Of a stretch of 64,000 nt of DNA, positions 26,973 to 54,007 are shown one piece after another. The position numbers were made by a program, and so were the translations under genes. The stretch is from Dendrobates tinctorius (lineage: Eukaryota): positions 2,728,001-2,792,000 of the forward strand of contig NW_027361692.1 in NCBI RefSeq assembly GCF_039654945.1, read 5' to 3'. Each line of letters starts with the position of its first letter. Position 1 is the first letter of the stretch. The notes beneath the pieces were generated by a model. It worked only from the letters and a program-made list of their open reading frames with translations. It had not been told where the DNA came from and searched no databases.

Positions 26973-28219
26973 TAGAGTTGAGCGACTTTTGCTTTTTTAT
27001 GGTCGAGTTTCGTTTCATGAAACCCGACTTTTCCAAAAGTTGGGTCGAGCAAAATCGGCCGACTATAGGGAAAAGTCGGGGATCCGACTGAAACACGAAA
27101 CCCAATGTAAGTCAATGGGGAATTAAAGTCGGCAGTGAGAGGAGGACAGGAAACACACCTACAGTGCCCATTTGAATGCCAAAAGCATCAATTCTTCTTA
27201 CTTAAGCTTGTCAACCTTAATTAACTTCATAATACTAGTTACGCACTGAAAAATGGGGGTTATTTGGCTAAAGTTGTGGGGGGGTAGGGCTGGCTCCAGG
27301 TTTTCATGTGCCCTGGGCAAAAGAGTGCCCCTTTAACACATACCACAACTCATGATGCTCCGATACGGCAGAGAAATAGCGGTATAGTACAATGAAAAAT
27401 ACTTCACTTTTTACATCTCATGACGAGGCCTATCTATTTCTCCATACAGAATCATTGGTCCCATATAATGTTTGAAATAGTATATGATGAGCTCCACATA
27501 ATGCTACAGTACATGTTGGTCCCCATGGATGAAGCTCCACTGTCTTATGGGCCCAAATAATGCTCCAAACATAATGGGCCCCATTTCTAATGCTCTAGTG
27601 TATAATGGGCCCTTTAAATGCTGCTCCAGTGTCTGATGTCCACCTTTGAAATGTTCCAGTGTATGGTGGGCCCCATCTATGATTCTCCAGAGTATAGTGC
27701 TCCCCAAAAATTGCTGTCCCAACATTGAAAACAATGGAATAAGTCTCCTCGCTAGGGAATCCCTGTAATAGTCTGGACTCCTCGTCGTCCCCATCTTCCA
27801 TCTCACTGCACAGTATTTCAACCTTGCAAGTGCTGTGATCCTGAGCAAGCAGGGGGGGCCCACTCATTGGCTACGGCACTGGCACAGGGTCCCTGATAGT
27901 ACGGTGGTGTGTCTGATGGCGGGTGGGCCGAACCTGCACTTTCATCTGCAGCTTCCTCTTTGTCACCGTGTAAGATGGAACTGTATATGGGAAGGGTAAC
28001 CTGAGTTTCATCAGGGTCAGATTCAGGCCGTGTAGCATGCGAGGGGAATGTAGTGGTCTGGGTCAATGTACCAGCAGATTCATCAAGCAGTGGCTGGGCA
28101 TCAGTGCACTTGTGTCGCCCCCAGGAGTACGGTCGCCACAGTGGCATTACCTTCCTCCTAGGGAGTGTGATGTCATGCTTGGGAGCAACGAAGGATCTCT
28201 CTAGCAGGTTAACTGATTG

Positions 28220-28329
28220 GGCGACGTTATTACCACGAGTCACAACCCTCCAAACAGCGTTCATGAAGGCAAAGTGTTTGTTTTACGTGGGCAGTATGGT
28301 TGCAAAGCTGAACCTTAAAGGAATGTCCA

Positions 28330-28360
<31 letters not shown>

Positions 28361-28715
28361 GTAATTTGACTCAACACGGGCAACCTCAACCATCCAACAA
28401 CAAAAAAGATGCACACATTGCAAGCTTAATTCCGTTAACGAACGAGACTTCGTCATGCCCCGCGGTCCGAGTCCGGCTTACTAGAGGGACACGCGAGGCT
28501 CTGGCACATGAGATTGGCCAATAACTGGTGTGTCAAGCCCTTACATGTCCGTGGCTGCATGTGCGCTACACTGAAAAGGCCAGCATTTTTCACTTACAGG
28601 TGCAGATAACCCGCTGAACAACGTTACTGATGGGGATCTGGGATTACAATTATTACCAGCGAACGATGATTTCCCAGTAAGTGCAGGTCAACTGCAGTTC
28701 CAGAATTAGGCCTAA
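28220..28715 (+). pseudogene. Degenerate 18S rRNA fragment (3' half, roughly V6-V8) captured inside the hAT element
   Basis: Colinear SSU motifs: AGTATGGTTGCAAAGCTGAA, AAGGGCACCACCAGGAGTGGAGCC, AATTTGACTCAACACGGG, TTAATTCCG.TAACGAACGAGAC, GCGCTACACTGA, GATGGGGATC..GGATT.CAATTATT, TTCCCAGTAAGTGC.GGTCA. Many substitutions and an internal deletion. Confidence 0.9.
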
Positions 28716-28798
28716 CCGTCATTCCTGAAAAAATGAAAAACTTACGTGTGCAAACCACAGGTGCTGTAGCTTGCTTAACAGCTCGCCAACTGTTCTCA

Positions 28799-29414
28799 GG
28801 CCCAGTATGGATTACACGTGATTTCACAAAGGTGAGAAAGGGTACCGTATCCCCGGATAACATGTATGGATAGCATAGTGTACACATTCAAAATATATGT
28901 CTATAGATCAGGAGGCAGGCTCAAACGGTGTCAGGCCCAGTATGGATTACACGTGATTGCACAAAGGTGAGAAAGGGTACCGTATCCCCGGATAACATGT
29001 ATAAATAGCATAGTGTACACATTCAAAATATATGTCTATAGATCAGGAGGCAGGCTCAAACGGTGTCAGACCCAGTATGGATTACACGTGATTGCACAAA
29101 GGTGAGAAAGGCTACGGTATCACCGAATAACATGTATGGATAGCATAGTGTACACATTCAAAATATATGTCTATAGATCAGGAGGCAGGCTCAAACGGTG
29201 TCAGGCCCAGCATGGATTACACGTGATTGCACAAAGGTGAGAAAGGGTACCGTATCCCCGGATAACATGTATGGATAGCATAGTGTACACATTCAAAATA
29301 TATGTCTATAGATCAGGAGGCAGGCTCAGACGGTGTCAGACCCAGTATGGATTACACGTGATTGCACAAAGGTGAGAAAGGGTACCATATCCCCGGATAA
29401 CATGTATGGGTAGC
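28799..29414. repeat. 135-bp tandem array, segment 1 (~4.6 units)
   Basis: Unit GGCCCAGTATGGATTACACGTG...CAAACGGTGTCA; period 135 (28801 to 28936). Confidence 0.95.
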
Positions 29415-29933
29415 TGTCATGCGGGGCTTAGTTCAACTAAGGCTGAAATACCCGGGGCCCCTGTGATGTCCCTTTAACTAGGGGAAACCCTGTCTGACCC
29501 TCAACCCAGGGTTTTTGCTGATGATGACCCTCCACCCTCCACCCAGTGAGGAGACACACCACCAAAGCCCCCACACAAATAATGACAGACAGGGAGAACT
29601 TAAACTGCACTGCGCCGCACACACAGAGGAATATACAGTAATGTGAACAGGGCACAACTAAACACAAATATGGGAAGGAGAAAGGATAACAACGGCTCAT
29701 ACGCCACCAGATACGAATCTCTCTCTCTTCAACACCTCCACTCCAGACAGGAACCATAGGCCAGCATGACTATTTAAAGACCATGGGCGTGACTAACCAT
29801 CCAACCTGGTCTCCAGCAAGATTAACCCCCGAGAGCCTGAAGATCAAGCCGGCGCCACTGAGGCTATAGTGGATGGAGGTGGAACTACCTCTGCCTGCCG
29901 GACGCTGTGGTGTGAACAGCGTCCGACATGACA
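29415..29933 (-). repeat. 3' LTR (519 bp; two internal deletions of ~50 and ~37 bp relative to the 5' LTR)
   Basis: Direct repeat of 34130-34735 with about 7 substitutions by eye. Confidence 0.92.
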
Positions 29934-32900
29934 TTACCCCGTCTTCTACGAGGGACCCCCGGACCCTCAAGACTCATAGGACCCGGCTTGTCCGGATGAC
30001 GATGGTGAAAGGAACTGACCAGCCGATTCGCATGTATGTCTGAGGCTGGAACCCAAGACCTCTCCTCCGGACCATACCCCCGCCAGTGCACCAAATACTG
30101 AAGAGTATGGCGTACTACTTGAGAGTCCACTACCTTGGCAACCTCAAACTCTAAATCGCCCTCCACCATGACTGGAGGTGGCATCGGCGTCGTGTCCACC
30201 AAGCCTACCACCTTTTTCATTAAAGCCCTGTGAAACACCTTGTGTATCTTGTACACCGCAGGAAGTTCCAACCGATAAGCCACTGGGTTAATGATGGCAG
30301 AAATCCTAAAAGGCCCAATAAACCTTGGACCCAGTTTTAAAGATGGAATTTTGAGTTTTATGTTCTTCGTAGCTAACCACACCCATTCACCCACACACAG
30401 GTCCGGACCTGGCACGCGTCTACTGTCAGCCACCCGTTTGTACCTAGCACTCATGCTCAACAAGCGCTGTTTCACCCTCCTCCAGACCGATGACAATTGG
30501 GCTCCTAGCTGATCCTCCTCCGGGACACCCCCCGAGTCAACCTGACGTAAGGTACAAAACTGAGGATGTTGACCGTACACACAAAAGAATGGAGACTCTC
30601 CCGATGACTCTTGGCGGTGATTATTTAATGCGAATTCGGCCAGAGGAAGGAAAGTAGACCACTCCTCCTGGTTGTCGGACACAAAGCATCGTAAATACTG
30701 TTCTAGATTTTGGTTCATGCGCTCAGTTTGTCCATTAGACTGTGGATGAAACGCCGATGAATGTGACAACTTGATCTCCAAACGTGAGCAAAACGCTTTC
30801 CAAAACCTCGCCACAAATTGTGTACCCCTATCAGATACTATGTCCGACGGAACTCCGTGGAGTCTGACCACCTCCTTCACAAATACCTGGACCAACGTCT
30901 TTGCATTGAGCAATGAAGACAATGCCACAAAATGCGCCATCTTTGAAAAACGGTCAACCACCACCAGGATGACCGTGTTCCCCGCCGAGGCTGGCAAGTC
31001 AGTGATGAAATCCACGGAGATTTCTGTCCATGGCCTATTGGGTACCCCCAGAGGCTGTAGCGTGCCAGCAGGACAGGTTCGGGGTGACTTAGCCCTAGCG
31101 CACGTGATGCAAGCTGCCACGTATGAGACCACGTCCTGCCGAATTTTGGGCCACCAGAAACGACGCGATACCAGCTCTAAGGTGCCCTTCACCCCTGGAT
31201 GACCAGCCAGTACCGAGTCGTGGTGTTGCTTCAACACCTTAAGCCGAAGATGCAGGGGTACAAATGATTTGTTGGCGGGAAGTCCTGGCAGTACCTCCTC
31301 TTGGGCCTCAGCAATCTCCGCCTCTACCTCCGTCGTGAGAGCCGAGACCACTACCCCTTCCTGGAGGATGGGTACAGGCTCTTCCGAGGTTCTCCCCCCG
31401 GAAAACACCTAGACAAAGCATCCGCCTTGGTGTTTTTAGCCCCGGGACGGTAAGTCACAAGAAAATTGAAACGAGTAAAAAACAATGCCCAGCGGGCCTG
31501 CCTAGGAGACAGACGCTTGGCCGACTCCAGACATAGCAGATTCTTATGGTCGGTGATGACTGTGACCTGGTGAGCCGCCCCCTCCAAGAAGTGTCGCAAT
31601 TCCTCAAAAGCCAATTTGATGGCCAACAACTCCCTGTTGCCGATATCATAATTCCGTTCGGCCGGCGACAGCTTCTTGGAGAAGTAGGCGCATGGATGCA
31701 TCTCGCTCAAGGACGAGCCTTGAGACAGTACTGCCCCCACTCCCACCTCCGACGCATCAACCTCCACCACAAAAGGTTTAGACACGTCTGGTTGCACCAG
31801 AATGGGGGCTGAAGCAAAACTATTCTTCAGATGCTCAAATGGACGTATAGCCACTTCAGGCCAGCTCGCCAGATCGGCACCTTTTTTGTCATGTCCGTGA
31901 GCGGTTTGGCGATAGTCGAAAAGTGTTTTATAAATTTCCTATAATAATTTGCAAACCCAAGGAACCGCTGGAGTGCTTTCAGACTCTCCGGCCTCTCCCA
32001 TTGCAGCACCGCTTGCACCTTAGTGGTGTCCATTTTAAACCCGGCTGCGGACACAATATATCCCAAAAAGGGCAACTCCTGGACAAAAAATAAACATTTT
32101 TCCAGCTTAGTATAGAGCTGGTTCTCCCGGAGCAACTGTAATACCTGCCTGACATGCTCCAAATGAGTGTCCCGATCGCTAGAATAAATGAGGATATCAT
32201 CCAGGTATACAATCACAAATCTCCCCAGGACATGAGCAAATACATCATTAATAAAATGTTGGAAAACGGCAGGCGCGGTGGTCAACCCAAACGGCATAAC
32301 CAGATTCTCAAAATGACCCTCAGGAGTGTTAAACGCCGTCTTCCACTCATCCCCCTGAAGGACCCTTATGAGGTTATACGCCCCCCCTGAGGTCCAGCTT
32401 GGAAAACCATTTCGCCCCCGCTACCTGGTTGAACAAATCCGGGATCAACGGCATTGGGTAGGGATCACGGATAGTAATCTGGTTTAACTCTCGGAAATCC
32501 AGACACGGGCGTAACCCCCCATCTTTCTTCTTAATGAAGAAAAACCCCGCGGCTACAGGCGAGGACGAAGGCCGGATGTGTCCTTTGCTCAGACTCTCCA
32601 TGATGTAGTCTTTCAGAGCTTGTCTCTCAGGACCAGAAATATTAAACATCCTGGCCTTAGGTAATTTGGCCCCGTGTTTAACCTAATCGCACAGTCATAG
32701 GCTCTATGTGGAGGCAGTTCTGAGCAACCCTTCTCAGAGAAAACATCCGCGAAATCCTGCAAAGCCTCCGGCAGGCTGGGCGTCATGGTGGACACACATG
32801 TGGCCAAGGAATTGTCTTGGCAGAAACCACTCCATTGTACTATGTCCTGAGTTTTCCAATCAATTACCGGGTTGTGCCTGGGCAACCATGGAAAACCCAG

Positions 32901-33236
32901 GACCATTTGTGCTGGGAGATTACGGAGGACCCTACATGTAACCGACTCAGAATGTAGGACCCCAATGTAGAGTTTCACCTCTGCCACAAACTCCATAATC
33001 TCCCCTTGAGGGAGGGGAACAGCATTAATGGTAACCACCTGTATGGAGTGAGGAAGTCTTTCGATCTTAAACCCGGCGGTGTGTGCAAACTCCTCATCTA
33101 TGAGATTGGTGGCGGAACCGCTATCCACAAACACTGATATTGGTAGCTCTCTGCCCGCGATAATAACCTTGGCAGGGAGCATACATTGAGATACCATCAT
33201 GGAGGATATGCATACGCTCAGTTGGGTCTCCTCCAT
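29885..33236 (-). pseudogene. pol: Gypsy pol (PR-RT-RH-IN-chromodomain), several frameshifts
   Basis: FVDSGS protease; YLDD RT; VEVDAS RNase H; HHCC plus VDFIT/SDRG/E integrase; C-terminal chromodomain FEVAKVVD..YLVHWRGYGPEERSW. Confidence 0.92.
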
Positions 33237-33247
33237 ACCCTCTGAGC

Positions 33248-34099
33248 TTAACAGTTTTCCGCCGGTGTGACCCTCTTAGGTAGTACTGGGCAAACGTTAA
33301 CATAATGACCTCTTTTACCACAGTAGAAACATGCTCCGGGCTTCCGGAATCCCGTAGCGCGACGCTTAACCTGTGCCACGCCAGCAATCTGCATAGGTTC
33401 TGGGGACTCATCTACTTCAACCACACTTGAACCTCTGCTTTCCCCCAGAGGTAGCGTCTCCTGTGCCCCCTGATGAAAACGGCGATCAATACGTATCACC
33501 AAACTCATGGCAGACTCCAACGATGCCGGAGTCTCATACATCAGGAGGGCTTGTTTAACCTTCCCTGATACCCCATGAATAAACTGGCTCCGCAGTGCTG
33601 GGTCATTCCACTGTGTGTCTATGGCCCAACGGCGAAATTCCGAACAATAGTCCTCTGCCAAGCGCTCCCCCTGGCGGAGGGTGCGGATTTTAGATTCCGC
33701 TAGAGCCAGTCGGTCAGGATCATCGAAAATGAGCCCGAGGGCAGAAAAAACATTATCGACAGAATGAAATGTAGCAGAGTCAGCTGGTAAGGAAAATGCC
33801 CATGCTTGGGGGTCACCACTCAGTAATGACAACACCAGCCCTACCCGCTGGGCCTCATTACCTGAGGAGATAGGGCGCATGCGGAAGTATAACTTGCAGG
33901 CCTCCTGAAATACGACAAATTTGCTGCGATCCCCTGAAAATCGTTCTGGCAGCGGAAACTTCGGCTCTGCACCGATACCTGCAGATGCCGTTTGCACCTT
34001 CGCTACTACCAGGCCCTGCTGCTGAACTGCCCCTTTCAACTCGGAGACTTGTAAGGACAGCGCCGCCAACTGGCGGGTTATGGAATCTAATGGATCCAT
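33248..34099 (-). CDS. gag: Gypsy Gag (283 aa) with CCHC zinc knuckle
   Basis: LPERFSGDR, LRQG, CFYCGKRGHYVNVC; ends at GGAAAAC, a possible -1 slippery site, just before the stop. Confidence 0.88.
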   Translation of the reverse strand: MDPLDSITRQLAALSLQVSELKGAVQQQGLVVAKVQTASAGIGAEPKFPLPERFSGDRSKFVVFQEACKLYFRMRPISSGNEAQRVGLVLSLLSGDPQAWAFSLPADSATFHSVDNVFSALGLIFDDPDRLALAESKIRTLRQGERLAEDYCSEFRRWAIDTQWNDPALRSQFIHGVSGKVKQALLMYETPASLESAMSLVIRIDRRFHQGAQETLPLGESRGSSVVEVDESPEPMQIAGVAQVKRRATGFRKPGACFYCGKRGHYVNVCPVLPKRVTPAENC

Positions 34100-34129
34100 G
34101 GACTCCTGAAAAATGTGGGCCGATTATAA

Positions 34130-34735
34130 TGTCATACGGGGCTTAGTTCAACTAAGGCTGAAATACCCGGGGCCCTGGTGATGTCCCTTTAACTAGGGGA
34201 AACCCTGTCTGACCCTCAACCCAGGGTTTTTGCTGATGGTGCAAATGCCTGAGCCTCCAACCTTTCCTTATCTCCTGCTCAGCCCTGCACATAACCCTCC
34301 ACCCTCCACCCAGTGAGGAGACACACCACGAAAGCCCCCACACAAATAATGACAGACAGGGAGAACTTAAACTGCACTGCGCCACACACACAGGAATATA
34401 CAGTAATGTGAACAGGGCACAACTAAACACAAATATGGGAAGGAGAAAGGATAACAACGGCTCATACGCCACCAGATACGAATCTCTCTCTCTTCAACAC
34501 CTCCACTCCAGACAGGAACCACTTGGTATGAAACACAAGCTATAATCGGCGACGCCCATAGGCCAGCATGACTATTTAAAGACCGTGGGCGTGACTAACC
34601 ATCCAACCTGGTCTCCAGCAAGATTAACTCCCGAGAGCCTGAAGATCAAGCCGGCGCCACTGAGGCTATAGTGGATGGAGGTGGAACTACCTCTGCCTGC
34701 CGGACGCTGTGGTGTGAACAGCGTCCGACATAACA
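34130..34735 (-). repeat. 5' LTR (606 bp)
   Basis: TG...CA; TATA-like TTTAAATA at 34580-34573 on the minus strand. Confidence 0.92.
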
Positions 34736-35548
34736 ATAGCATAGTGTACGCATTCAAAATATATGTCTATAGATCAGGAGGCAGGCTCAAACGGTGTCAG
34801 GCCCAGTATGGATTACACGTGATTGCACAAAGGTGAGAAAGGGTACCGTATCCCCGGATAACATATATGGATAGCATAGTGTACACATTCAAAATATATG
34901 TCTATAGATCAGGAGGCAGGCTCAGATGGTGTCAGGCCCAGTATGGATTACACGTGATTGCACAAAGGTGAGAAAGGGTACAGTATCACCGAATAACATG
35001 TATGGATAGCACAGTGTACACATTCAAAATATATGTCTATAGATCAGGAGGCAGGCTCAAACCGTGTCAGGCCCAGTATGGATTACACGTGATTGCAAAA
35101 GGTGAGAAAGGGTACCGTATCCCCGGATAACATGTATGGATAGCATAGTGTACACATTCAAAACATATGTCTATAGATCAGGAGGCAGGCTCAAACGGTG
35201 TCAGGCCCAGTATGGATTACACGTGATTGCACAAAGGTGAGAAAGGGTACCGTATTCCTGGATAACATGTATGGACAGCATAGTGTACACATTCAAAATA
35301 TATGTCTATAGATCAGGAGGCAGGCTCAGACGGTGTCAGGCCCAGTATGGATTACACGTGATTGCACAAAGGTGAGAAAGGGTACCGTATCACCGGATAA
35401 CATGTATGGATAGCATAGTGTACACATTCAAAATATATGTCTATAGATCAGGAGGCAGGCTCAGACGGTGTCAGGCCCAGTATGGTTTACACGTGATTGC
35501 ACAAAGGTGAGAAAGGGTACCGTATCCCCGGATAACATGTATGGATAG
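34736..35548. repeat. 135-bp tandem array, segment 2 (~6 units)
   Basis: Same unit; resumes in register after the Gypsy TSD. Confidence 0.95.
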
Positions 35549-35621
35549 AATCATAGAATCGTAGAGTTGGAAGGGACCTCCTGGGCCATCTGGTCCAACC
35601 CCCTGCTCAAAGCAGGATTCG

Positions 35622-37830: not shown

Positions 37831-37976
37831 GTGATTGGTTTCTCTTTCTCCAATATTTTTATTAATTAGATTCTTTCGTCTTTTTTCTTCCTTTCCAATT
37901 CTAATAGCAGAGTTCTCAATAGCATTTGTCAGGTGTATGGCTTTTTCTGGTCTTTTGCTTCCCTTCCCATGTTGCT

Positions 37977-38934: not shown

Positions 38935-39010
38935 CTTGAGTTTCTTAAAAACGATGAAAGATGAGCCAAAATTTGCGCGTGCGGCTTTTCCGATTTCCTC
39001 TTTTCATCTG

Positions 39011-42000: not shown

Positions 42001-45000
42001 CAAAATATATGTCTATAGATCAGGAGGCAGGCTCAAACGGTGTAAGGCCCAGTATGGATTACACGTGATTGCACAAAGGTGACAAAGGGTACCGTATCAC
42101 CGGATAACATGTATGGATAGCAAAGTGTACACATTCAAAATATATGTCTATGGATCAGGAGGCAGGCTCAAACGGTGTCAGGCCCAGTATGGATTACACG
42201 TGATTGCACAAAGGTGAGAAAGGGTAACGTATCCCCGGATAACATGTATGGATAGCATAGTGTACAGATTCAAAATATATGTCTATAGATCAGGAGGCAG
42301 GCTCAAACGGTGTCAGGCCTATTATGGATTACACGTGATTGCACAAAGGTGAGAAAGGGTACCGTATCCCCGGATAACATGTATGGATAGCATAGTGTAC
42401 ACATTCAAAATATATGTCTATAGATCAGGAGGCAGGCTCAAGCGGTGTAAGGCCCAGTATGGATTACACGTGATTGCACAAAGGTGAGAAAGGGTACCGT
42501 ATCACCGGATAACATGTATGGATAGCAAAGTGTACACATTCAAAATATATGTCTATAGATCAGGAGGCAGGCTCAAACGGTGTCAGGCCCAGTATGGATT
42601 ACACGTGATTGCACAAAGGTGAGAAAGGGTACCGTATCACCGGATAACATGTATGGATAGCATAGTGTACACATTCAAAAATATATGTCTATAGATCAGG
42701 AGGCAGGTTCAAACTGTGTAATGCCAGTATGGATTACACGTGATTGCACAAAGGTGACAAAGGGTACCGTATCACCGGATAACATGTATGGATAGCAAAG
42801 TGTACACATTCAAAATATATGTCTATAGATCAGGAGGCAGGCTCAAATGGTGTCAGGCCCAGTATGGATTACACGTGATTGCACAAAGGTGAGAAAGGGT
42901 ACCGTATCCCCGGATAACATGTATGGATAGCATAGTGTACACATTCAAAATATATTTCTATAGATCAGGAGGCAGGCTCAAGCGGTGTAAGGCCCAGTAT
43001 GGATTACACGTGATTGCACAAAGGTGAGAAAGGGTACCGTATCACCGGATAACATGTATGGATAGCAAAGTGTACACATTCAAAATATATGTCTATAGAT
43101 CAGGAGGCAGGCTCAAACGGTGTCAGGCCCAGTATGGATTACACGTGATTGCACAAAGGTGAGAAAGGGTACCGTATCACCGGATAACATGTATGGATAG
43201 CATAGTGTACACATTCAAAAATATATGTCTATAGATCAGGAGGCAGGTTCAAACTGTGTAAGGCCAGTATGGATTACACGTGATTGCACAAAGGTGACAA
43301 AGGGTACCGTATCACCGGATAACATGTATGGATAGCAAAGTGTACACATTCAAAATATATGTCTATAGATCAGGAGGCAGGCTCAAACGGTGTCAGGCCC
43401 AGTATGGATTACACGTGATTGCACAAAGGTGAGAAAGGGTACCGTATCCCCGGACAACATGTATGGATAGCATAGTGTACAGATTCAAAATATATGTCTA
43501 TAGATCAGGAGGCAGGCTCAAACGGTGTCAGGCCTAGTATGGATTACACGTGATTGCACAAAGATGAGAAAGGGTACCATATCCCCGGATAACATGTATG
43601 GATAGCATAGTGTACACATTCAAAATATATGTCTATAGATCAGGAGGCAGGCTCAGACGGTGTCAGGCCCAGTATGGATTACACGTGATTGCACAAAGGT
43701 GAGAAAGGGTACCGTATCACCGGATAACATGTATGGATAGCATAGTGTACACATTCAAAATATATGTCTATAGATCAGGAGGCAGGCTCAAACGGTGTAA
43801 GGCCCAGTATGGATTACACGTGATTGCACAAAGGTGAGAAAGGGTACCGTATCACCGGATAACATGTATGGATAGCATAGTGTACACATTCAAAATATAT
43901 GTCTATAGATCAGGAGGCAGGCTCAAACGGTGTCAGGCCCAGTATGGATTACACGTGATTGCACAAAGGTGAGAAAGGGTACCGTATCACCGGATAACAT
44001 GTATGGATAGCATAGTGTACACATTCAAAATATATGTCTATAGTTTAGGAGGCAGGCTCAAACGGTGTCAGGCCCAGTATGGAATACACGTGATTGCACA
44101 AAGGTGAGAAAGGGTACCGTATCCCGGGATAACATGTATGGATAGCATAGTGTACACATTCAAAATATATGTCTATAGATCAGGAGGCAGGCTCAAACGG
44201 TGTCAGGCCCAGTATGGATTACACATGATTGCACAAAGGTGAGAAAGGGTACCGTATCACCGGATAACATGTATGGATAGCATAGTGTACACATTCAAAA
44301 TATATGTCTATAGATCAGGAGGCAGGCTCAAACGGTGTAAGGCCCAGTATGGATTACACGTGATTGCACAAAGGTGACAAAGGGTACCGTATCACCGGAT
44401 AACATGTATGGATAGCAAAGTGTACACTTTCAAAATATATGTCTATGGATCAGGAGGCAGGCTCAAACGGTGTCAGGCCCAGTATGGATTACACGTGATT
44501 ACACAAAGGTGAGAAAGGGTAACGTATCCCCGGATAACATGTATAAATATCATAGTGTACACATTCAAAATATATGTCTATAGATCAGGAGGCAGGCTCA
44601 AACGGTGTAAGGCCCAGTATGGATTACACGTGATTGCACAAAGGTGAGAAAGGGTACCGTATCCCCGGATAACATGTATGGATAGCATAGTGTACACATT
44701 CAAAATATATGTCTATAGATCAGGAGGCAGGCTCAAACGGTGTAAGGCCCAGTATGGATTACACGTGATTGCACAAAGGTGAGAAAGGGTACCGTATCCC
44801 CGGATAACATGTATGGATAGCATAGTGTACACATTCAAAATATATGTCTATAGATCAGGAGGCAGGCTCAAACGGTGTAAGGCCCAGTATGGATTACACG
44901 TGATTGCACAAAGGTGAGAAAGGGTACCGTATCACCGGATAACATGTATGGATAGCATAGTGTACACATTCAAAATATATGTCTATAGATCAGGAGGCAG

Positions 45001-45974
45001 GCTCAGACGGTGTCAGGCCCAGTATGGAATACACATGATTGCACAAAGGTGAGAAAGGGTACCGTATCACCGGATAACATGTATGGATAGCATAGTGTAC
45101 ACATTCAAAATATATGTCTATAGATCAGGAGGCAGGCTCAAACGGTGTAAGGCCCAGTATGGATTACACGTGATTGCACAAAGGTGACAAAGGGTACCGT
45201 ATCACCGGATAACATGTATGGATAGCAAAGTGTAGACATTCAAAATATATGTCTATAGATCAGGAGGCAGGCTCAAACGGTGTCAGGCCCAGTATGGATT
45301 ACACGTGATTGCACAAAGGTGAGAAAGGGTACCGTATCACCGGATAACATGTATGGATAGCATAGTGTACACATTCAAAATATATGTCTATAGATCAGGA
45401 GGCAGGCTCAAACGTTGTCAGGCCCAGTATGGATTACACGTGATTGCACAAAGGTGAGAAAGGGTACCGTATCACCGGATAACATGTATGGATAGCATAG
45501 TGTACACATTCAAAATATATGTCTATAGATTTGGAGGCAGGCTCAAACGGTGTCAGGCCCAGTATGGAATACACGTGATTGCACAAAGGTGAGAAAGGGT
45601 ACCGTATCCCCGGATAACATGTATGGATAGCATAGTGTACAGATTCAAAATATATGTCTATAGATCAGGAGGCAGGCTCAAACGGTGTCAGGCCCAGTAT
45701 GGCTTACACGTGATTGCACAAAGGTGAGAAAGGGTACCGTATCACCGGATAACATGTATGGATAGCATAGTGTACACATTCAAAATATATGTCTATAGAT
45801 CAGGAGGCAGGCTCAAACGGTGTAAGGCCCAGTATGGATTACACGTGATTGCACAAAGGTGACAAAGGGTACCGTATCACCGGATAACATGCATGGACAG
45901 CATAGTGTACACATTCAAAATATATGTCTATAGATCAGGAGGCAGGCTCAGACGGTGTCAGGCCCAGTATGGAT
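39011..45974. repeat. 135-bp tandem array, segment 3 (~52 units)
   Basis: Highly homogeneous units with recurrent diagnostic variants. Confidence 0.97.
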
Positions 45975-46393
45975 TTGACGGCCTAGAGTACACAGCGGAG
46001 GAGCAAGGAGAGGTAAAGATTGCAAATGCTGGGGCCCTGCCCAAGCAAGGGGGGCCCACTCCTGGGCGTCGGTACTGGCACTGGGCCCCTCATAGTACGG
46101 CGGTGTGTCTGACGGCGGGTGTGCACCACCACCGTCAGAGACACTTGATTGCACTATGAGGGACCAGGTGCCAGTGCCCGCGCCCAAGAGTCGGCCTACC
46201 CACCTGTCCAGGGCAACGGCACTCACACGGTTTCGTGCGCTAGGTGGTGACCCCGGCCATGGGGGGGAAGCAGCACAGTTAGGGAGTTTTAGAAAGTGGC
46301 ATATGTTGATGTTGGACATTCAGCTGATGCAAAAGGCGAAATTGTTCAAGTCCCAGGAAGAAGAGGACCAAAGCAAGCCATTTTTCTGTCACC

Positions 46394-49300
46394 CTATGTG
46401 TCATCAGGGGAAGGTCGGACAAAATCCTTGGAAACCCATGCATGGTTCATTTTAATGAAGGTTAGATCATCCACATTTTGGGTTGACAGACGGGTCCTTT
46501 TTTCTGTCAGGATTGATCCAGCTGCACTGAAGACTCTTTCCGATAGCACACTTGCAGCTGGGCAAGCGAGCTCCTGTAAGGCATATTGTGCCAGGTCAGG
46601 CCAGGTGTCCAGTTTAGCGGCCCAATAGTCAAAGGGGAATGACCTGTGCGGGAGAACATCGATATTGGAGGAAACGTTGTTTGTAACCATAGTTGACAAC
46701 TGCTATCTCCTGTCACTTTCCATCGATGCATTATTACCAGTTGTGTGAGCGGTACTTGAAAAATCAGTCCACAACATTGTCATGAAACCCCTGTCTCCAA
46801 CGCCACTTCTGCTGTGTGCACCACGAACACCTCTGCCAAGCTGCCCCCGGCCCGTACGGCTCGTGTTAGAACCATCACCACTGCTGTGTGCTGGGAATGC
46901 CTCAACCAACCGGTTTACCAGAGTTGCTTGTTTATTAGCCAATATTAGGTCAAGGTTCTCGTGTGGCATGATGTTTTGTAATTTGCCTTTATAGCGTGGA
47001 TCCAGGATGCTGGCCAACCAGCAGTCGTCATCGCTCATCATTTTGGCAATGCGGGGTCCCTTTTTAGGATCTGCAAGGCATAACCTGACATGTGGGCCAA
47101 TGTTCCTGGTGTCAATGATGCACTGCGAGTGCTGGTTGAAGGAGCACTTTCTGGCAAATCCACATCCCTCCAGTCACGCACAAACCCTGTACCAGACCTT
47201 GCCACGCCAACATTTTCACTTGCCCCACGAGATGCATCCTCCTCCCCTAAGTAATCATCCCCATCATCATCCTCCTCCTCCTCTTCTTCCTCCACCTCGT
47301 CCAGGAGAGGTCCCTGAGCAGACAATGGCTGAATGTCATCAGGGATTCCCTCCACCTCTTCCTCCTCGTCAACATTGGCTGCAGACGCCTGCTCCTTAAG
47401 GTGCGTCAAAGTTTGCATGAGCAGACGCATAAGTGGGATGCTCATGCTTAGGATGACGTCGTCTGCGCTTACCAGCCGTGTGCATTCCTCAAAACACTGA
47501 AGGACTTTACAGAGGTCTTTCAGCTTCGACCACTGCACACCTGTCAACTCCATGTCTGCTCTCAAAGTGCCTGGCCGTGTATCCTCCCACAAATGCATTA
47601 TGGCCTGCCTCTGTTTGCACAGCCGCTTAACCATGTGCAGGGTGGAGTTCCACCTTGTTGCAATGTCGATAATGAGGCGGTGGTTGGGAAGGTGGAGCAA
47701 TCGCTGCAGCTTCTGCATACGAATGGAGTGTACAGGCGACCGGCGGATGTGCGCGCACAGTCTTCGCACCTTCTGGAGCAGGGCTGTTAACTCCGGATAA
47801 TTGCTGAGGAAGCACTGCACCACCAGGTTCAAGGTGTGAGCCAAGCAAGGTATGTGGCTGAGTTTTGAAAGGGCTATGGCTGCCACAAAATTACGGCCGT
47901 TATCACTAACTACCTTGCCTGCCCCAAGATGTATACTGCCCAGCCATGACTCAGTTTGTCGCTGAAAGTACTCGGCAAGCACCTTCGCGGTATGTCTGTC
48001 GCCCAAACACATCTTCTGCAACACAGCCTGCTGACGTTTTCCACTAGCTGCTCGATAGGGGGACACCTCGTGTGCAACAGTGGCAGCTGCAGATGGAGTG
48101 CTCGTACGACTGCGCTCTGTGGACGAGCTTTCGCTTCTGGAGGAGGAGGAGGAGGGTTGAACGCCTACAGCCAACTGTTTCCTATACCGTGGGCTAGGCA
48201 GCACTGTCCCACCACCGCTGTCCCCTGTGGACCCTACATCCACCGCATTAACCCAGTGCGCAGTGATGGACACGAAACAGCCCTTGCCATGCCAACTGGA
48301 CCATGCATCTGTTGTGAGGTGCACCTTTCCACTCACTGACTGCTTGAGTGCATGGACAATGCGGTCTTTCACATGATGGTGGAGGGCTGGGATGGCTTTG
48401 CGAGAGAAGAAGTGGCGACTGGGTAGGTCATAGCGTGGTACTGCATAGGCCATGAGTTCGCGGAAAGCTGCGCTTTCCACCAACCGATAGTGCATCATCT
48501 CTAATGAGATTAGTTTGGCAATGTGGGCGTTCAAACCCAGTGTACGCGGATGAGAAACTGAGTACTTTCTTGACCTACTCATAATCTCTGGGAGGGTGAG
48601 CTGGACTTGAGAGCTGCATATGGTGGAACTAGCGGTGGACAGGGCGGACTGAGAGAGGGTTGATGATGGTGATGGAGTTGGTGTTCTTTCTGATGGCCTA
48701 GATTCAGTCTTTCGTTGATATAACAGTGGGATTCCCTGACTGCTTTGGCCTTTCAACGACACCTCAACATTTGCTGCTGTGCTAACCAGTGGGCTTACAG
48801 TGGGGGGAAACAATGTAGTGTTGCTGACTACCTTCTTTGTGATCAGTTGCACATGTGGTACTTGAGGTTTGGTGTTGTGTCCACGCTTGCAAGTGCATGC
48901 TGGTTAAATGTCTAAGCATGCAACTGGTATTCAAATTTTTCCGATTTTTCCCTCGGCTAAAGGTCTTTGCGCACTTCTTACAGATAACCTTGGCCTGATC
49001 ATGAGGATTTTGTTCAAAAAAGTGCCACACTGCACTTTTCCCACTTTGGAAGACATTTTGCGGCCTAGCACGCTGTGCTATTTTGACCGTCTGGACAAGC
49101 TGTCCACCAACTCTTTTGATTTTTGGAACCTGTCTTTGGAGTGCTCCGGGCCTGCCAGATAACAGCTGTTGTGATGTCGATGTCTGCTGTGGATGCTCCT
49201 CCTCCTCATCTGAGGTATTGGAAGCAGCACCCTCTTCCCCCAATGGATGCCAATCTGGGTCAACAACTGGGTCATCCATCACCTCCTCTTCAATGTCATG

Positions 49301-49936
49301 TGCACCTTCCTCTGTGTCACCGTGTATGGTGGTATAGTATGCGGGAAGGGGCACCTGAGTCTCATCAGGGTCAGAATCTGACTCATTGCACTGCGAGGAC
49401 AATGTAGTGCTCTGACTGAATGTACCAGCAGAATCATCTGTCAGTGGCTGTGCATCAGTGCACTCCATGTCAGATTCATCTTGGCCTGGGTAATTCACCA
49501 TTTCACTTGATAACCCAGGCATGGTATGTGAAAACAGCTCCATGGAGTAATCAGTTGTATGGCCTGTGTCATCCTTCAATCTTGGTTGGGGTGAAGGACA
49601 CAAGGAAAGGTGTGGTTCATGAACATGACCCTCCAATGACGACTCAGTGCTTTTATTTTTTACAACTTCAGAAGAGGAGGCGATAGAGCTGGAGGCTGAG
49701 TCAGCAATGTAAGCCAAAACTGTTTCCTGATGCTCTGGCTTTAAAAGCGGTTTGCCAACTTCTAGAAAACTAAGCCTTCGAGGCCTTGTGGAGCCAGACG
49801 ATGACGCAGGCTCAACACCTCCTGCATTCGTTCCTATTTTGCTTTTGCCACTACCATCAGTTCCACCACCAACACCATCATTACCAGCTGGCAACCCCCG
49901 CCCAATTACACGGCCTCTTCCACCAGCCTTCCTCAT
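46394..49936 (-). pseudogene. hAT transposase (ZBED-like: BED finger, DDE core, hATC dimerization domain), 2 frameshifts + 1 stop
   Basis: SAVWHFF...CKKC...MLRHLTSMH (BED); LTTDAWS, VSDNG, CLAH, TRWNST; YW..LA..LACPAASVLSERVFS. Spread over ORFs 48782-49936, 47038-48852, 46703-47041 and 46394-46699. Confidence 0.92.
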
Positions 49937-50002
49937 TTTTGGTAAAAATGTACACAAAATCCCACAAACTATATAGTAATGTAAAACAAGGTACAAGGTG
50001 TA

Positions 50003-51655
50003 TATAGGACAGGGGAGACGTAGAATTTCTGAACACACTTGTGGACACTGTTGGATTGTGTGAGGCCCAGTTAATATCACACCGCTATGTCACAGGCTCA
50101 ATGTCGCAGGTGTGAAAAATGTCACTATAGGACAGGGGAGATGTAGAATTTCTGAACACACTTGTGGACACTGTTGTGTGAGGCCCAGTTAATATCACAC
50201 CGCTATGTCACAGGCTCAATGTCGCAGGTGTGAAAAATGTCACTATAGGACAGGGGAGATTTAGAATTTCTGAACACACTTGTGGACACTGTTGGATTGT
50301 GTGAGGCCCAGTTAATATCACACCGCTATGTCACAGGCTCAATGTTGCAGGTGTGAAAAATGTCACTATAGGACAGGGGAGATGTAGAATTTCTGAACAC
50401 ACTTGTGGACACTGTTGTGTGAGGCCCAGTTAATACCACACCGCTATGTCACAGGCTCAATGTCACAGGTGTGAAAAATGTCACTATAGGACAGGGGAGA
50501 TGTAGAATTTCTGAACACACTTGTGGACACTGTTGGATTGTGTGAGGCCCAGTTAATATCACACCGCTATGTCACAGGCTCAATGTCGTAGGTGTGAAAA
50601 ATGTCACTATAGGACAGGGGAGATGTAGAATTTCTGAACACACTTGTGGACACTGTTGGATTGTGTGAGGCCCAGTTAATATCACACCGCTATGTCACAG
50701 GCTCAATGTCGCAGGTGTGAAAAATGTCACTATAGGACAGGGGAGATGTAGAATTTCTGAACACACTTGTGGACACTGTTGTGTGAAGCCCAGTTAATAT
50801 CACACTGCTATGTCACAGGCTCAATGTCGCAGGTGTGAAAAATGTCACTATAGGACAGGGGAGATGTAGAATTTCTGAACACACTTGTGGACACTGTTGT
50901 GTGAGGCCCAGTTAATATCACACCGCTATGTCACAGGCTCAATGTCGTAGGTGTGAAAAATGTCACTATAGGACAGGGGAGATGTAGAATTTCTGAACAC
51001 ACTTGTGGACACTGTTGTGTGAGGCCCAGTTAATATCACACCGCTATGTCACAGGCTCAATGTCGCAGGTGTGAAAAATGTCACTATAGGACAGGGGAGA
51101 TGTAGAATTTCTGAACACACTTGTGGACACTGTTGTGTGAGGCCCAGTTAATATCACACCGCTATGTCACAGGCTCAATGTCGCAGGTGTGAAAAATGTC
51201 ACTATAGGACAGGGGAGATGTAGAATTTCTGAACACACTTGTGGACACTGTTGTGTGAGGCCCAGTTAATATCACACCGCTATGTCACAGGCTCAATGTC
51301 GTAGGTGTGAAAAATGTCACTATAGGTCAGGGGAGATGTAGAATTTCTGAACACACTTGTGGACACTGTTGGATTGTGTGAGGCCCAGTTAATATCACAC
51401 CGCTATGTCACAGGCTCAATGTTGCAGGTGTGAAAAATGACACTATAGGACAGGGGAGATTTAGAATTTCTGAACACACTTGTGGACACTGTTGTGTGAG
51501 GCCCAGTTAATATCACACCGCTATGTCACAGGCTCAATGTCGCAGGTGTGAAAAATGTCACTATAGGACAGGGGAGATGTAGAATTTCTGAACACACTTG
51601 TGGACACTGTTGGATTGTGTGAGGCCCAGTTAATATCACACCGCTATGTCACAGG
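50003..51655. repeat. 118/123-bp tandem array (~14 units)
   Basis: Unit AGGCCCAGTTAATATCACACC...; two lengths differing by a 5-bp indel (50063, 50181, 50304...). Confidence 0.95.
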
Positions 51656-51730
51656 CAGAAATTGACTAGTGTATGACAAACTACAAGGTGTATATAGAAT
51701 TGGGCAGAATAGGAATCTCCCTAGAGTGTA

Positions 51731-52630
51731 GGTCTGTAAGAACGGAACATGTCCTCAACTTATCCTTACAGAGTGACACACAGATAGCTTCACTGTGGCC
51801 CTGATAACAGCTGTTACACGGTACTGAGAGAGGAGCGCGCACGTACACCGCTGTCCGGTGTCCGTAAAATTGTCAAGCTCCGTGTTTTTTAAGTATACGG
51901 ACTGACACACGCTGTCTCTCTATAGTTTTGAATGTGATCAAACAGCAAATATACTTAACTGTTTGAAAAGCAGACAAAACTAGAAGGTGGAGGTCTGTAA
52001 GAACGGAACATGTCCTCGACTTATTCTTACAGAGTGACACACAGATAGCTTCGCTGTGGCCGTGATAACAGCCATTACACGGTACTGAGAGAGGAGAGTG
52101 CACGTACACCGCTGTCCGGTGTCCGTAAAATTGTCAAGCTCCGTGTTTTTTAAGTATACGGACTGACACACGCTGTCTCTCTATAGTTTTGAATGTGATC
52201 AAACAGCAAATATACTTAACTGTTTGAAAAGCAGACAAAACTAGAAGGTGGAGGTCTGTAAGAACGGAACATGTCCTCGACTTATTCTTACAGAGTCACA
52301 CACAGATAGCTTCACTGTGGCCGTGATAACAGCCGTTACACGGTACTGAGAGAGGAGCGTGCACGTACACCGCTGTCCGGTGTCCGTAAAATTGTCAAGC
52401 TCCGTGTTTTTTAAGTATACGGACTGACACACGCTGTCTCTCTATAGTTTTGAATGTGATCAAACAGCAAATATACTTAACTGTTTGAAAAGCAGACAAA
52501 ACTAGAAGGTGGAGGTCTGTAAGAACGGAACATGTCCTCGACTTATTCTTACAGAGTCACACACAGATATCTTCACTGTGGCCATGATAACAGCCGTTAC
52601 ACGGTACTGTGTGAGGAGCGTACACCGCTG
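51731..52630. repeat. 261-bp tandem repeat (~3.4 units)
   Basis: GGTCTGTAAGAACGGAACATGTCC at 51731, 51992, 52253 and 52514. Confidence 0.93.
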
Positions 52631-52954
52631 TATGGTGTGAAAAAATGCACGCTCAGTACCTCACCAGGACAAAAAAAAAAAATTTGGATTGCTTTTAAAA
52701 AAGCAGTTTGCAGAGCAGTGGGAAAACAGCAATGCAGCTATCAGGAAGCCTTATAAGGCAGCCTAACAACCAACACAGCTGATCCAGCAAAATATAGCCT
52801 CCACTTGCACTGCACACACAGTGACTGGTGTGTTGCACAGGCAAAATCGCTAGCAGCAGAAGCAGTTTTTGGTGTCTTCTTCCCTGCCTAATGCTCTCCC
52901 TACAGAATCAGCCGCAGCAGCAGCTGCTCTCCCTATTCTGATATCAGCATGAGT

Positions 52955-53100
52955 AACATGGCGGTCGGCGTGCACGCCCTTTTATACCCCCTGTGACGCC
53001 CCCCAAAGCAAGCCAATCACTTGCATGCCCTTCTCAAAAATGGTGGTGACCCCTGCCTATGTCATCACGTTGCCCACAGTGTCCGTGGATCCTGATTGGC
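52955..53100 (-). promoter_or_regulatory. Putative Pol II promoter of the hAT transposase
   Basis: Two CCAAT boxes, TATAAAA (52986-52980) and a YY1-like GCCATGTT (52962-52955), oriented toward the transposase. Confidence 0.55.
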
Positions 53101-53261
53101 TGAAAAAGGGCGGAAAACAAACTTTTGAAATGCGACTTTGGCGCTAAAGTCGCCGAGCTCGTGGCCGACCTCACCCTAGGGTCGGGTTTCGTTTCATGAA
53201 ACCCGACTTTACCAAAAGTCGGCGACTTGTGAAATTTTTTGACCCGTTTCGCTCAACTCTA

Positions 53262-53400
53262 TTCTCAAGTCCTCTGATAGTTATCTTCCTCTCTTTCTGT
53301 TTTCCATGATTAGTGTGGCACACAGACGCACAATGCAAAGACTGAATCAACTTGTCATCTTTTTATCTGGTTTCACATGTGATTTTCATATTGCCCACAC
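53262..53400 (-). mobile_element. Tc1 relic, right part (5' end of the transposase region)
   Basis: TTCTCAAGTCCTC..TTTTCCATG..TGTGGCACACA parallels 14537-14600. Confidence 0.75.
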
Positions 53401-54007
53401 ATGAGCACAACGGGCCCACCAGAGTTGATGTGCAAGGCTAGAGTGGAGTTGTTGTGATGAACAAGCTCGAAAAATCAATACAGTACATAAACACACATGT
53501 AGTCTCCAGCAGTGTCATTTAGCAAACAACCAATCATCATTACATGATGTGCTTTCAAAAAATCATGGTTACATCCCATTATGACAATTAGAAGATGTTA
53601 TGTGGTATCTATAGTCCAAAGTTTTTCCTGAAGCCACTGTGACCTTAAAGCTCATGGTGACCCAAGATAATCGGCTTCAGTAAATGCTACAACTTTACTT
53701 AGTCATTAATCATTTTTCTTCCTACCATGGAATGTGTGGTTTTCTAAGCTGAATTATCTTTAGTTATTTTAAGCTATGACTAAGTAAAGTAAAGGCGTAT
53801 CTAAAGGGATATGTGAAAGGGTATTTATTATATAGTAATTAATTGTCCCACCACTGGGACCATTGAGGTGTGTAAGAACATGCAGGTTCCTCTTCTGTTA
53901 GCCTTTCCCCTCTCTTCATCCCGCTGTACATGAACAGTCAGCAGTCCAGAAATGCATTTATTAGTAAAAAAGGCTTAAGTACATGTATACAATTTTCGTT
54001 TATGTAA

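What the first reader, a model, noticed from the sequence alone, without database searches (positions are those of the whole stretch)
26973..53261. 26-kb hAT transposon acting as a cargo and satellite vehicle
Seen: matching 13-bp TIRs and a perfect 8-bp TSD bracket 26.3 kb, and the interrupted Tc1 rejoins exactly. Removing the nested Gypsy and CR1 leaves ~17.5 kb, of which ~11 kb is three internal tandem arrays around a ~6.5-kb core with promoter, transposase, rRNA fragment and duplicated coding module. Known: typical autonomous hATs are a few kb. Inference: a family of giant hATs that generates and disperses satellite DNA and contributes to genome expansion.
Basis: partly seen in the sequence, partly recalled or inferred. 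Interest (0 to 1): 0.8.

Follow-up and report, generated by a model that had tools for sequence, protein, structure and literature searches.

The report
Large frog hAT transposon carrying satellite arrays
This is a real but dead 26-kb copy of a very abundant poison-frog cut-and-paste (hAT) jumping gene, about 11 kb of it tandem repeats; it is a large, clean example of transposons carrying satellite-like DNA, which is already known, and this scan has seen the same family elsewhere in this genome.

Summary
Exact 13-bp inverted ends (26973-26985, 53249-53261) are flanked by a perfect 8-bp duplication, TTCTCAAG. Removing the element rejoins a Tc1/Sleeping-Beauty-type transposase gene without a gap. 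Inside is a hAT transposase gene on the minus strand, with BED finger, D-D-E motifs and hATC domain. It is broken by two frameshifts and one stop.

The element holds three arrays:
- one 135-bp array of about 62 units, split by a nested Ty3/Gypsy element and a CR1-like LINE;
- a 118-bp array;
- a 261-bp array.

It also holds a decayed antisense 18S rRNA fragment and a chimeric "duplicate" module.

Contigs of public runs show the transposase core at very high copy number in three organisms, with the 135- and 118-bp units present in all three. The chimeric module is an old internal-deletion junction, also present in a second species. The module and the 18S piece are far more diverged than this copy is young, so they are inherited parts, not fresh cargo. 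Not shown: that the family creates satellites, that the monomers occur outside such elements, or any sizeable part in genome expansion.

The parts
26543..26972 (-). Left half of the interrupted Tc1/Sleeping-Beauty-type element (host of the insertion); the last 8 bp are the left TSD copy TTCTCAAG (26965-26972)
   Evidence: Similar to other Tc1-like copies at 13526-13745 and 14360-14545. HTH_SB domain E=5.6e-11 up to the junction. TSD read.
26973..26985 (+). Left (3'-side) terminal inverted repeat TAGAGTTGAGCGA
   Evidence: Exact 13/13 inverted match to 53249-53261.
26986..27130 (.). Left subterminal region with a cluster of short motifs (CGACTTT / AAGTCGG / GGTCGA) and the 21-mer TTTCGTTTCATGAAACCCGAC
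   Evidence: The motifs cluster only at the two ends of the element. The 21-mer occurs only at 27008 and 53187, with 0 expected.
27824..28110 (-). Chimeric module: remnant of an internal-deletion derivative. The N-terminal coding piece (like 49288-49464) is joined to a piece that lies 3' of the stop codon (like 46020-46124).
   Evidence: 80% and 83% identity. tblastn with P0001 residues 27-82. The same junction with matching filler (30/33) is in an organism B contig.
28289..28719 (+). Decayed fragment of 18S rRNA (model positions 1118-1666), antisense to the transposase
   Evidence: Rfam RF01960, 120.8 bits, E=4e-32. The alignment shows many substitutions and internal deletions.
28796..29414 (.). 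135-bp array, segment A (4.6 units)
   Evidence: TRF. Same register and same similarity as segments B and C.
29415..34735 (-). Nested Ty3/Gypsy (chromovirus-type) LTR retrotransposon. LTRs at 29415-29933 and 34130-34735. gag, protease, RT, RNase H, integrase and chromodomain lie in several broken frames.
   Evidence: Pfam hits. LTR pair with 9 mismatches in 517 bp. Flanking (A/G)TAGC duplication in the monomer.
34736..35548 (.). 135-bp array, segment B (6.0 units)
   Evidence: TRF.
35549..39009 (-). Nested CR1-like LINE with esterase-type ORF1, endonuclease and RT; its 3' end lies at 35549
   Evidence: Pfam Lipase_GDSL_2, Exo_endo_phos and RVT_1. GATAG duplication on both sides.
39010..45975 (.). 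135-bp array, segment C (51.6 units)
   Evidence: TRF score 12953. Units are 98% identical to their consensus and 96.6% pairwise, with no higher-order period.
45976..46393 (-). Non-coding stretch 3' of the transposase stop codon
   Evidence: The stop is at 46394-46396 of the hATC frame. Covered by family contigs in all four runs.
46394..49938 (-). hAT transposase gene, about 1,180 codons, broken by a frameshift near 48791-48828, a frameshift near 47040-47104 and an in-frame stop at 46703-46705
   Evidence: zf-BED E=1.8e-11. Dimer_Tnp_hAT E=1.4e-12. 70% identical to Ranitomeya variabilis 'ZBED4-like' P0001. Motifs TTDAWSS, VSDNGRNF, CLAHTLNL, RWNS and LSERVFSAAG.
49939..50002 (-). 64-bp stretch between the 118-bp array and the transposase ATG
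   Evidence: Sequence read. No ATG on the sense strand.
50003..51656 (.). 118-bp array (13.8 units, also reads as 241-bp dimers), just upstream of the transposase ATG
   Evidence: TRF. Shares a core of about 25 nt with the 135-bp unit. No sense-strand ATG. X14 contig record 16 bridges 49792-50065.
51726..52625 (.). 261-bp array (3.4 units)
   Evidence: TRF, 97% matches.
52626..53248 (.). Right (5'-side) subterminal region with the same short motifs and the 21-mer
53249..53261 (-). Right terminal inverted repeat
53262..53600 (-). Right TSD copy TTCTCAAG (53262-53269) and the rest of the interrupted Tc1-like element

Best explanation
A single cut-and-paste insertion of a large member of a dendrobatid-frog hAT family put the element into a Tc1-type element and made the 8-bp duplication. 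The TSD is of the Ac type.

The family's build, read in the sense of the transposase:
- 5' end
- 261-bp array
- 118-bp array
- transposase of about 1,180 codons
- short 3' stretch
- 135-bp array
- old antisense 18S fragment
- old deletion-junction module
- 3' end

The arrays sit in the non-coding stretches on both sides of the gene. The 135- and 118-bp units share a core, so they descend from one older unit multiplied by slippage or unequal exchange. They travel because they lie between the ends that the transposase recognises.

After the 135-bp array had formed, a Gypsy element and a CR1-like LINE landed in it, and the transposase gene took three disabling changes. This copy can now move only with transposase supplied by other copies.

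Shown here: the ends, the TSD, the empty site, the domains, the breaks, the arrays, the nesting, and the family's abundance in three organisms. Inferred: that the arrays and modules were already in the element when it inserted, how the arrays grew, and that the chimeric module and 18S piece came from template switching during gap repair.
For: Ends, TSD and empty site.

Only one pair of ends. The subterminal motifs and the 21-mer lie at the two ends only, and there is no internal TIR remnant.

hAT domains and D-D-E motifs. Nearest relatives are Ranitomeya proteins at 55-71% identity.

The breaks were mapped with relatives. At all three breaks a large share of the family's contig depth differs from this copy: about 100% at the stop, and 29-100% and 32-100% at the two frameshift sites. 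So the breaks do not belong to the family as a whole.

Family abundance:
- 69,944, 40,415, 158 and 6,162 contig pieces of four runs from three organisms lie on 45750-50300.
- All 30 bins are covered, including the 135- and 118-bp units.
- An X14 contig bridges the core/118 junction.
- In another X14 contig the core is preceded by a diverged unit with the same CCCAGT core.

The 135-bp array predates both retroelements. It resumes in register, and segments A, B and C are equally alike, at 0.960-0.967.

The modules are old. The chimeric module is 17-20% diverged from the resident gene, and its junction occurs in organism B. The 18S piece is heavily decayed.

That is a lead, not a test.
Against:
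- No listed contig demonstrably bridges the 135-array/core junction at 45975/45976. One X14 contig has a different neighbour there, and another has a different neighbour at 50003.
- Contig depths are not copy numbers.
- The Gypsy and CR1 elements could have been carried in rather than inserted later.
- The length of the 7-kb uninterrupted array rests on the assembly alone.
Confidence: 0.75

Rival explanations
1. The hAT insertion is real, but the arrays, above all the 8.4-kb 135-bp array, grew in place after insertion from one or a few units. On this reading the great length belongs to this locus and not to the family, and the element did not carry a satellite.
For: - The units are very uniform: 98% to their consensus, with no decay of similarity with distance.
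- An X14 contig shows a different, diverged unit next to the core at 45971.
Against: - Segments A and B are cut off from C by the retroelements, yet are as similar to C as C is to itself. So the array was complete before the Gypsy insertion, whose LTRs are 1.74% diverged.
- The 135-bp unit is present at 85% likeness or better in many distinct contigs of all three organisms: 111, 59, 4 and 24 contigs at position 45863.
Confidence: 0.15
2. The element is a chimera or macrotransposon. An autonomous element (right part) and a diverged deletion derivative (left 1.8 kb) became joined, with host DNA between them (the 18S piece, perhaps the 135-bp satellite), and then moved once as a unit from the two outer ends.
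For: - The left part holds a deletion-junction module 17-20% diverged from the resident gene.
- A fragment of a host rRNA gene lies between it and the array.
- Filler DNA at the junction is what abortive gap repair leaves. This rests on my own knowledge of Ac/Ds derivatives.
Against: - No internal TIR or subterminal motif cluster is left anywhere inside.
- The junction is old and present in a second species.
- So any chimerism happened in an ancestor of the family, not at this locus.
Confidence: 0.07
3. Assembly artefact: two different hAT copies were joined through a collapsed or mis-extended repeat array.
For: - The window has assembly gaps at 3852-4316 and 4345-4734.
- 7 kb of 96-98% identical units is hard to assemble.
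Against: - The two outer flanks are the two halves of one Tc1 gene with a matching 8-bp TSD. Both ends therefore belong to one insertion.
- Only the number of units could be wrong.
Confidence: 0.03

Closest known systems
Tandem repeats riding on frog MITEs: Xmix/Xstir in Xenopus laevis, miDNA4 in X. tropicalis (listed in the review PMC9659126)
   Same: A cut-and-paste DNA transposon of a frog holds an internal tandem array between its inverted ends and spreads it by transposition. Array length varies between copies.
   Different: Those are small non-autonomous elements of a few hundred bp, of Tc1-mariner or unassigned type. Here it is a transposase-encoding hAT element of 17.5 kb with three arrays on both sides of the gene.
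FEDoR, a ~3.5-kb non-autonomous dispersed element of Rana temporaria with internal tandem-repeat motifs, inverted repeats and TSDs (PMC12054243)
   Same: A frog DNA-transposon-like element built largely of internal tandem repeats. Short similarity to hAT was reported in its flanking region.
   Different: FEDoR has no ORF and no assigned superfamily. Here the superfamily, the transposase and the ends are all identified. No sequence relation was tested.
Satellite-like arrays carried by Helentron/Helitron non-autonomous elements (oyster, PMC7492417; Drosophila DINE, PMC9659126 Table 1)
   Same: Many dispersed short arrays arise because a mobile element carries a central tandem-repeat block.
   Different: Those move by rolling-circle transposition, without TIRs or TSDs.
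En/Spm (CACTA) elements with tandem repeats in the 5' UTR giving rise to satellites (ENSAT1 of Arabidopsis; Jozin of Chenopodium; PMC9659126 Table 1), and the foldback element Tetris (PMC4079207)
   Same: Autonomous-type class II elements with tandem arrays in non-coding internal or terminal parts that seed satellite DNA.
   Different: Other superfamilies. In Tetris the repeats lie inside the long TIRs. Here the arrays lack the subterminal motifs.
Ac/Ds internal-deletion derivatives with filler DNA, made by abortive gap repair (my own knowledge of the maize literature, not checked here)
   Same: The chimeric module joins an N-terminal coding piece to a piece 3' of the stop codon, with a few extra bases at the junction and no splice-site dinucleotides.
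   Different: Here the derivative's junction lies inside a larger element that also has a full-length, though broken, gene.

Membership tests
hAT superfamily of DNA transposons | 8-bp target site duplication | tested here: met
   TTCTCAAG on both sides. One copy restores the paralogous Tc1 sequence.
hAT superfamily of DNA transposons | Short terminal inverted repeats (about 10-25 bp) | tested here: met
   13/13 exact. Begins TAG, like the Ac ends as I recall them.
hAT superfamily of DNA transposons | Transposase with an RNase-H-like D-D-E core and a C-terminal hAT dimerisation domain (often an N-terminal BED finger) | tested here: met
   zf-BED E=1.8e-11. PF05699 E=1.4e-12. Motifs TTDAWSS, VSDNGRNF and LSERVFSAAG. 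Relatives annotated ZBED4/6-like with BED and hATC. The sequence match to Hermes is only weak, E=0.16.
hAT, Ac-type subgroup | TSD pattern nTnnnnAn (pattern recalled from the hAT literature, not checked here) | tested here: met
   TTCTCAAG has T at position 2 and A at position 7. So does GTCATGAG of the small element at 61295-62623. No phylogeny was made.
Autonomous (self-mobilising) element | One uninterrupted transposase reading frame | tested here: not met
   Two frameshifts and one in-frame stop.
Transposon-borne satellite DNA ('satellite vehicle') | Tandem arrays lie between the element's ends and are mobilised with it | tested here: met
   All three arrays lie inside the TIR/TSD pair.
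Transposon-borne satellite DNA ('satellite vehicle') | The same arrays are present in independent copies of the family | tested here: inconclusive
The units and the core/118 junction are found in contigs of other runs and species, but no second full copy was read.
Transposon-borne satellite DNA ('satellite vehicle') | The monomers also form arrays outside the elements (a true satellite derived from the TE) | not tested
   None in the rest of this window. A genome-wide search is not possible with these tools.
Composite / macrotransposon | Inner pair of element ends retained between the outer ends | tested here: not met
   No TIR within 2 mismatches inside the element; the only 3-mismatch hit (36372) lies in the CR1 element, at chance frequency. 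There is no internal subterminal motif cluster.

The most novel reading that the evidence does not exclude
The arrays may be working parts of the family rather than passive passengers. The 118-bp array, with no ATG on the sense strand over the 1.79 kb upstream of the start codon, could be a long leader of the transposase message. The downstream 135-bp array could be a transcribed 3' module. On this reading the giant hAT family would be a main, regulated source of dispersed satellite DNA in the expanded genomes of dendrobatid frogs.
Probability: 0.15. Interest if true: 0.65.

Novelty: new variant of a known kind. Interest (0 to 1): 0.35.

Why it matters
Transposons that carry tandem arrays are a recognised route by which satellite DNA is born and scattered. 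The described cases are mostly small non-autonomous elements or Helitrons. The review of giant eukaryotic transposons read here (PMC6431247) does not mention hAT at all.

A hAT family with a transposase gene, 13-17 kb long, about two-thirds arrays, and abundant in several poison-frog species would extend that picture. It would give a concrete unit for asking how much repeat DNA in 6-12-Gb frog genomes arrives by cut-and-paste elements.

This single copy adds the largest example so far in this scan. It also gives a clean order of events: array first, then two retroelement insertions. It does not show a new mechanism.

Tried and rejected
- **Fetching other copies.** A protein scan of metagenome contigs found no relative. 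A TIR pattern scan there gave 120 loci, none with any similarity to the element, so they are chance matches. The search of earlier findings by sequence was blank for the 135-bp unit and the transposase, which means nothing.
- **Composite with inner ends.** Rejected.
- **Chimeric module as a spliced second product.** Rejected. The skipped stretch does not begin and end with splice dinucleotides on the sense strand, one arm lies 3' of the stop codon, and there is filler at the junction.
- **Arrays as multiplied transposase-binding subterminal motifs.** Rejected. None of the motifs occurs in the arrays.
- **Structured-RNA reading of the units.** 135- and 118-bp units folded on either strand are no more stable than shuffles, with z from +1.32 to -0.43. 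The shared GTGT..ACAC hairpin core is real but has no energetic support here.
- **ATG-free leader.** There are 0 ATG in 1,787 bp on the sense strand against 54 on the other strand. The effective sample is a single 118-bp unit, for which I estimate a chance of roughly 0.2, so this is weak.
- **Pfam on the 604-aa catalytic ORF.** No hit even at E=10. The relatives' precomputed PF27039 did not hit in this scan.
- **Depths.** Not used as copy numbers, as the tool warns.
- **Eukaryotic promoter claim.** No tool here tests it.

Full report
**1. The observation**

The 13-base sequence TAGAGTTGAGCGA stands at 26973-26985 on the plus strand and at 53249-53261 on the minus strand. Within two mismatches, only one other pair exists in the window, at 61295 and 62611, and it belongs to a different small element. 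With three mismatches, nothing above chance appears inside the element.

The eight bases TTCTCAAG precede the left end and follow the right end. I joined the flanks with one TSD copy kept. The join aligns without a gap across the junction to a paralogous Tc1-like copy near 14,500, which has the same TTCTCAAG. It scores 134, against 120 with both TSD copies and 103 with none. The left-flank reading frame matches the Sleeping Beauty transposase HTH domain up to the very junction.

So the ends, the TSD and the rejoining of the interrupted Tc1 are all confirmed. Both ends belong to one insertion event. This also removes most of the worry about a mis-join: only the number of repeat units could be wrong.

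**2. Anatomy**

Tandem Repeats Finder gives these arrays:

| Unit | Position | Units |
|---|---|---|
| 135 bp | 28796-29414 | 4.6 |
| 135 bp | 34736-35548 | 6.0 |
| 135 bp | 39010-45975 | 51.6 |
| 118 bp | 50003-51656 | 13.8 |
| 261 bp | 51726-52625 | 3.4 |

The three 135-bp stretches are one array cut twice.
- A Ty3/Gypsy element lies at 29415-34735. It has TG..CA LTRs and encodes gag, protease, RT, RNase H, integrase and a chromodomain in several broken frames. It is flanked by (A/G)TAGC.
- A CR1-like LINE lies at 35549-39009, with esterase-type ORF1, endonuclease and RT. It is flanked by GATAG.
- After each insertion the array goes on in register.

The LTRs differ at 9 of 517 aligned bases, 1.74%.

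The 59 whole units are 98% identical to their consensus and 96.6% pairwise. They show no higher-order period and no decay of similarity with distance. Units left of, between and right of the retroelements are equally alike, at 0.960-0.967. The array was therefore complete before both retroelements arrived.

**3. The transposase**

The gene lies on the minus strand from the ATG at 49938 to the stop at 46394, about 1,180 codons.
- It has a BED finger (E=1.8e-11).
- It has a catalytic part with the hAT blocks TTDAWSS, VSDNGRNF, CLAHTLNL and RWNS.
- It has a hAT dimerisation domain (PF05699, E=1.4e-12) with LSERVFSAAG.

The nearest proteins are Ranitomeya variabilis and R. imitator predictions at 55-71% identity. 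Other dendrobatid, ranid and hyperoliid 'ZBED4/6-like' hAT proteins are at 34-47%.

Mapping two relatives onto the DNA shows three breaks:
- a frameshift near 48791-48828;
- a second frameshift near 47040-47104;
- an in-frame stop at 46703-46705.

This copy cannot make transposase.

**4. Ends and inner parts**

Short motifs (CGACTTT, AAGTCGG, GGTCGA) and a 21-mer cluster within about 150 bp of each end and nowhere else in the element. There is one pair of ends and no remnant of inner ends. The arrays do not contain these motifs, so they are not multiplied transposase-binding sites.

The 'duplicated coding module' at 27824-28110 has two arms:
- one is 80% identical to 49288-49464, the N-terminal coding region;
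- the other is 83% identical to 46020-46124, which lies 3' of the stop codon.

It is thus the junction of an internal deletion of about 3.2 kb. It is not a duplication made in this copy.

The 18S fragment (28289-28719, plus strand, 120.8 bits) has about 12% substitutions even in its best block, and large internal deletions. For so conserved a gene, that means long neutral decay.

**5. Other copies**

Metagenome scans gave only chance hits.

Public runs were more useful. The stretch 45700-53400 is held by runs of three coded organisms: A at 0.67 of sampled words, B at 0.39, and C up to 0.25. Very small runs of organism A still hold a third of its words.

I laid the contigs of four runs on 45750-50300 at 85% likeness.

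| Run | Organism | Contig pieces laid |
|---|---|---|
| X1 | A | 69,944 |
| X5 | B | 40,415 |
| X14 | A | 158 |
| X17 | C | 6,162 |

What the laid contigs show:
- All 30 bins are covered in every run. The core is a very high-copy family in all three organisms.
- The bins that lie wholly in the 135-bp and 118-bp units are covered too. At 45863 there are 111, 59, 4 and 24 distinct contigs.
- At each of this copy's three breaks a large share of the family's contig depth differs from it. The share is about 100% at the stop, and 29-100% and 32-100% at the two frameshift sites. The consensus-like X14 contigs differ at all three. The breaks therefore do not belong to the family as a whole.
- An X14 contig runs from 49792 to 50065, across the junction of core and 118-bp array.
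- One X5 contig of organism B joins 46121 to 49315 with 34 extra letters. 30 of 33 of these match the filler of the window's chimeric module. That junction is old and shared between species.
- At 45971 another X14 contig is preceded not by the 135-bp unit but by a diverged sequence with the same CCCAGT core. At 50003 one contig has another neighbour. The arrays therefore vary between copies.

All of these are contigs. Their depths are not copy numbers, and the 'RNA' label of X14 and X17 is a guess. Nothing is claimed about expression.

**6. Relation between the arrays**

The 135- and 118-bp units share a core of about 25 nt, GTGTnAGGCCCAGT..AT.ACAC. This fits descent from one older unit, and the 'hairpin-core' arrays noted elsewhere in this genome.

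Single units folded on either strand are no more stable than shuffled sequence, with z from +1.32 to -0.43.

The 1,787 bp upstream of the start codon has no ATG on the sense strand and 54 on the other strand. This stretch comprises the gap, the 118-bp array and the spacer. It agrees with earlier notes that call the upstream array a start-codon-free leader. But the effective sample is one 118-bp unit, so the evidence is weak. The 261-bp array has sense-strand ATGs.

**7. What it is**

It is a genuine but defective large copy of an abundant dendrobatid hAT family of the Ac type, judged by its TSD pattern. Its non-coding parts on both sides of the transposase gene are tandem arrays.

The 18S piece and the deletion-junction module are much more diverged (12-20% and more) than this copy is from its family. 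So they were part of the element long before it inserted here.

The likeliest origin of those two modules is template switching during repair of an excision gap in an ancestor. That is inference from what is known of Ac/Ds derivatives.

The arrays move because they lie between the ends. Nothing shows that they are made by the transposase.

**8. Comparison with what is known**

Transposon-borne tandem arrays are well described:
- frog MITEs (Xmix/Xstir, miDNA4), En/Spm 5' UTR repeats and Helitron DINEs (review PMC9659126);
- oyster Helentrons (PMC7492417);
- Tetris (PMC4079207);
- FEDoR, a 3.5-kb repeat-filled element of Rana temporaria (PMC12054243).

A review of giant eukaryotic transposons does not mention hAT (PMC6431247). 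The Dendrobates tinctorius genome paper gives hAT as 3.91% of the assembly and does not discuss tandem repeats (PMC11152451).

So a transposase-encoding hAT of this size, about 63% arrays, is a new variant of a known kind, not a new kind.

The scan itself found the same thing before on other DNA of this genome: s1-381462 (same modules, 13.7 kb), s1-382824, s1-386068 and s1-362235.

**9. Verdict**

The element is a vehicle for arrays. It has not been shown to generate satellites or to drive genome expansion.
- Interest is moderate to low.

Noticed in passing
window 61295-62623: A second, small hAT-type non-autonomous element. Its TIR is TAGGGATGAGCGA at both ends, with a perfect 8-bp TSD, GTCATGAG. 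About 82% of its 1,329 bp is a (GCACAGCCCC)n minisatellite at 61404-62493. It lies inside the stretch another first-reader note calls an LTR element with FXR1 cargo.
   Followed up: partly
window 29410-29415, 34736-34740, 35544-35548 and 39010-39014: The Gypsy element and the CR1-like LINE entered the 135-bp array at almost the same place in the unit. Their target duplications, TAGC/ATAGC and GATAG, lie within GGATAGCATAG. By my estimate the chance of such a coincidence is roughly 0.04. It might point to a preferred site or structure in the unit.
   Followed up: no
window 49939-51725 (minus strand): There is no ATG on the transposase sense strand over the 1,787 bp upstream of the start codon, against 54 on the opposite strand. 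This agrees with earlier notes on a start-codon-free leader, but rests on one repeated 118-bp unit.
   Followed up: partly
window 45750-46053, in run X14: In the small run X14 of organism A, the 135-bp unit bins have summed contig depths of 1018 and 494, against about 50-150 over most of the transposase gene. Either the unit far outnumbers the gene, or, if the run is RNA, it is more abundant as transcript. The run's kind is only guessed.
   Followed up: no
window 3852-4316 and 4345-4734: Two runs of N, which are assembly gaps or masked stretches. They were left untouched.
   Followed up: no
window 8674-8893 / 10138-10349 and 10350-10691 / 18321-18672: Two inverted repeat pairs of 220-350 bp at 91-92% identity. 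There are also several Tc1-like copies at 13,000-15,100. They are probably further transposon copies and were not examined.
   Followed up: no
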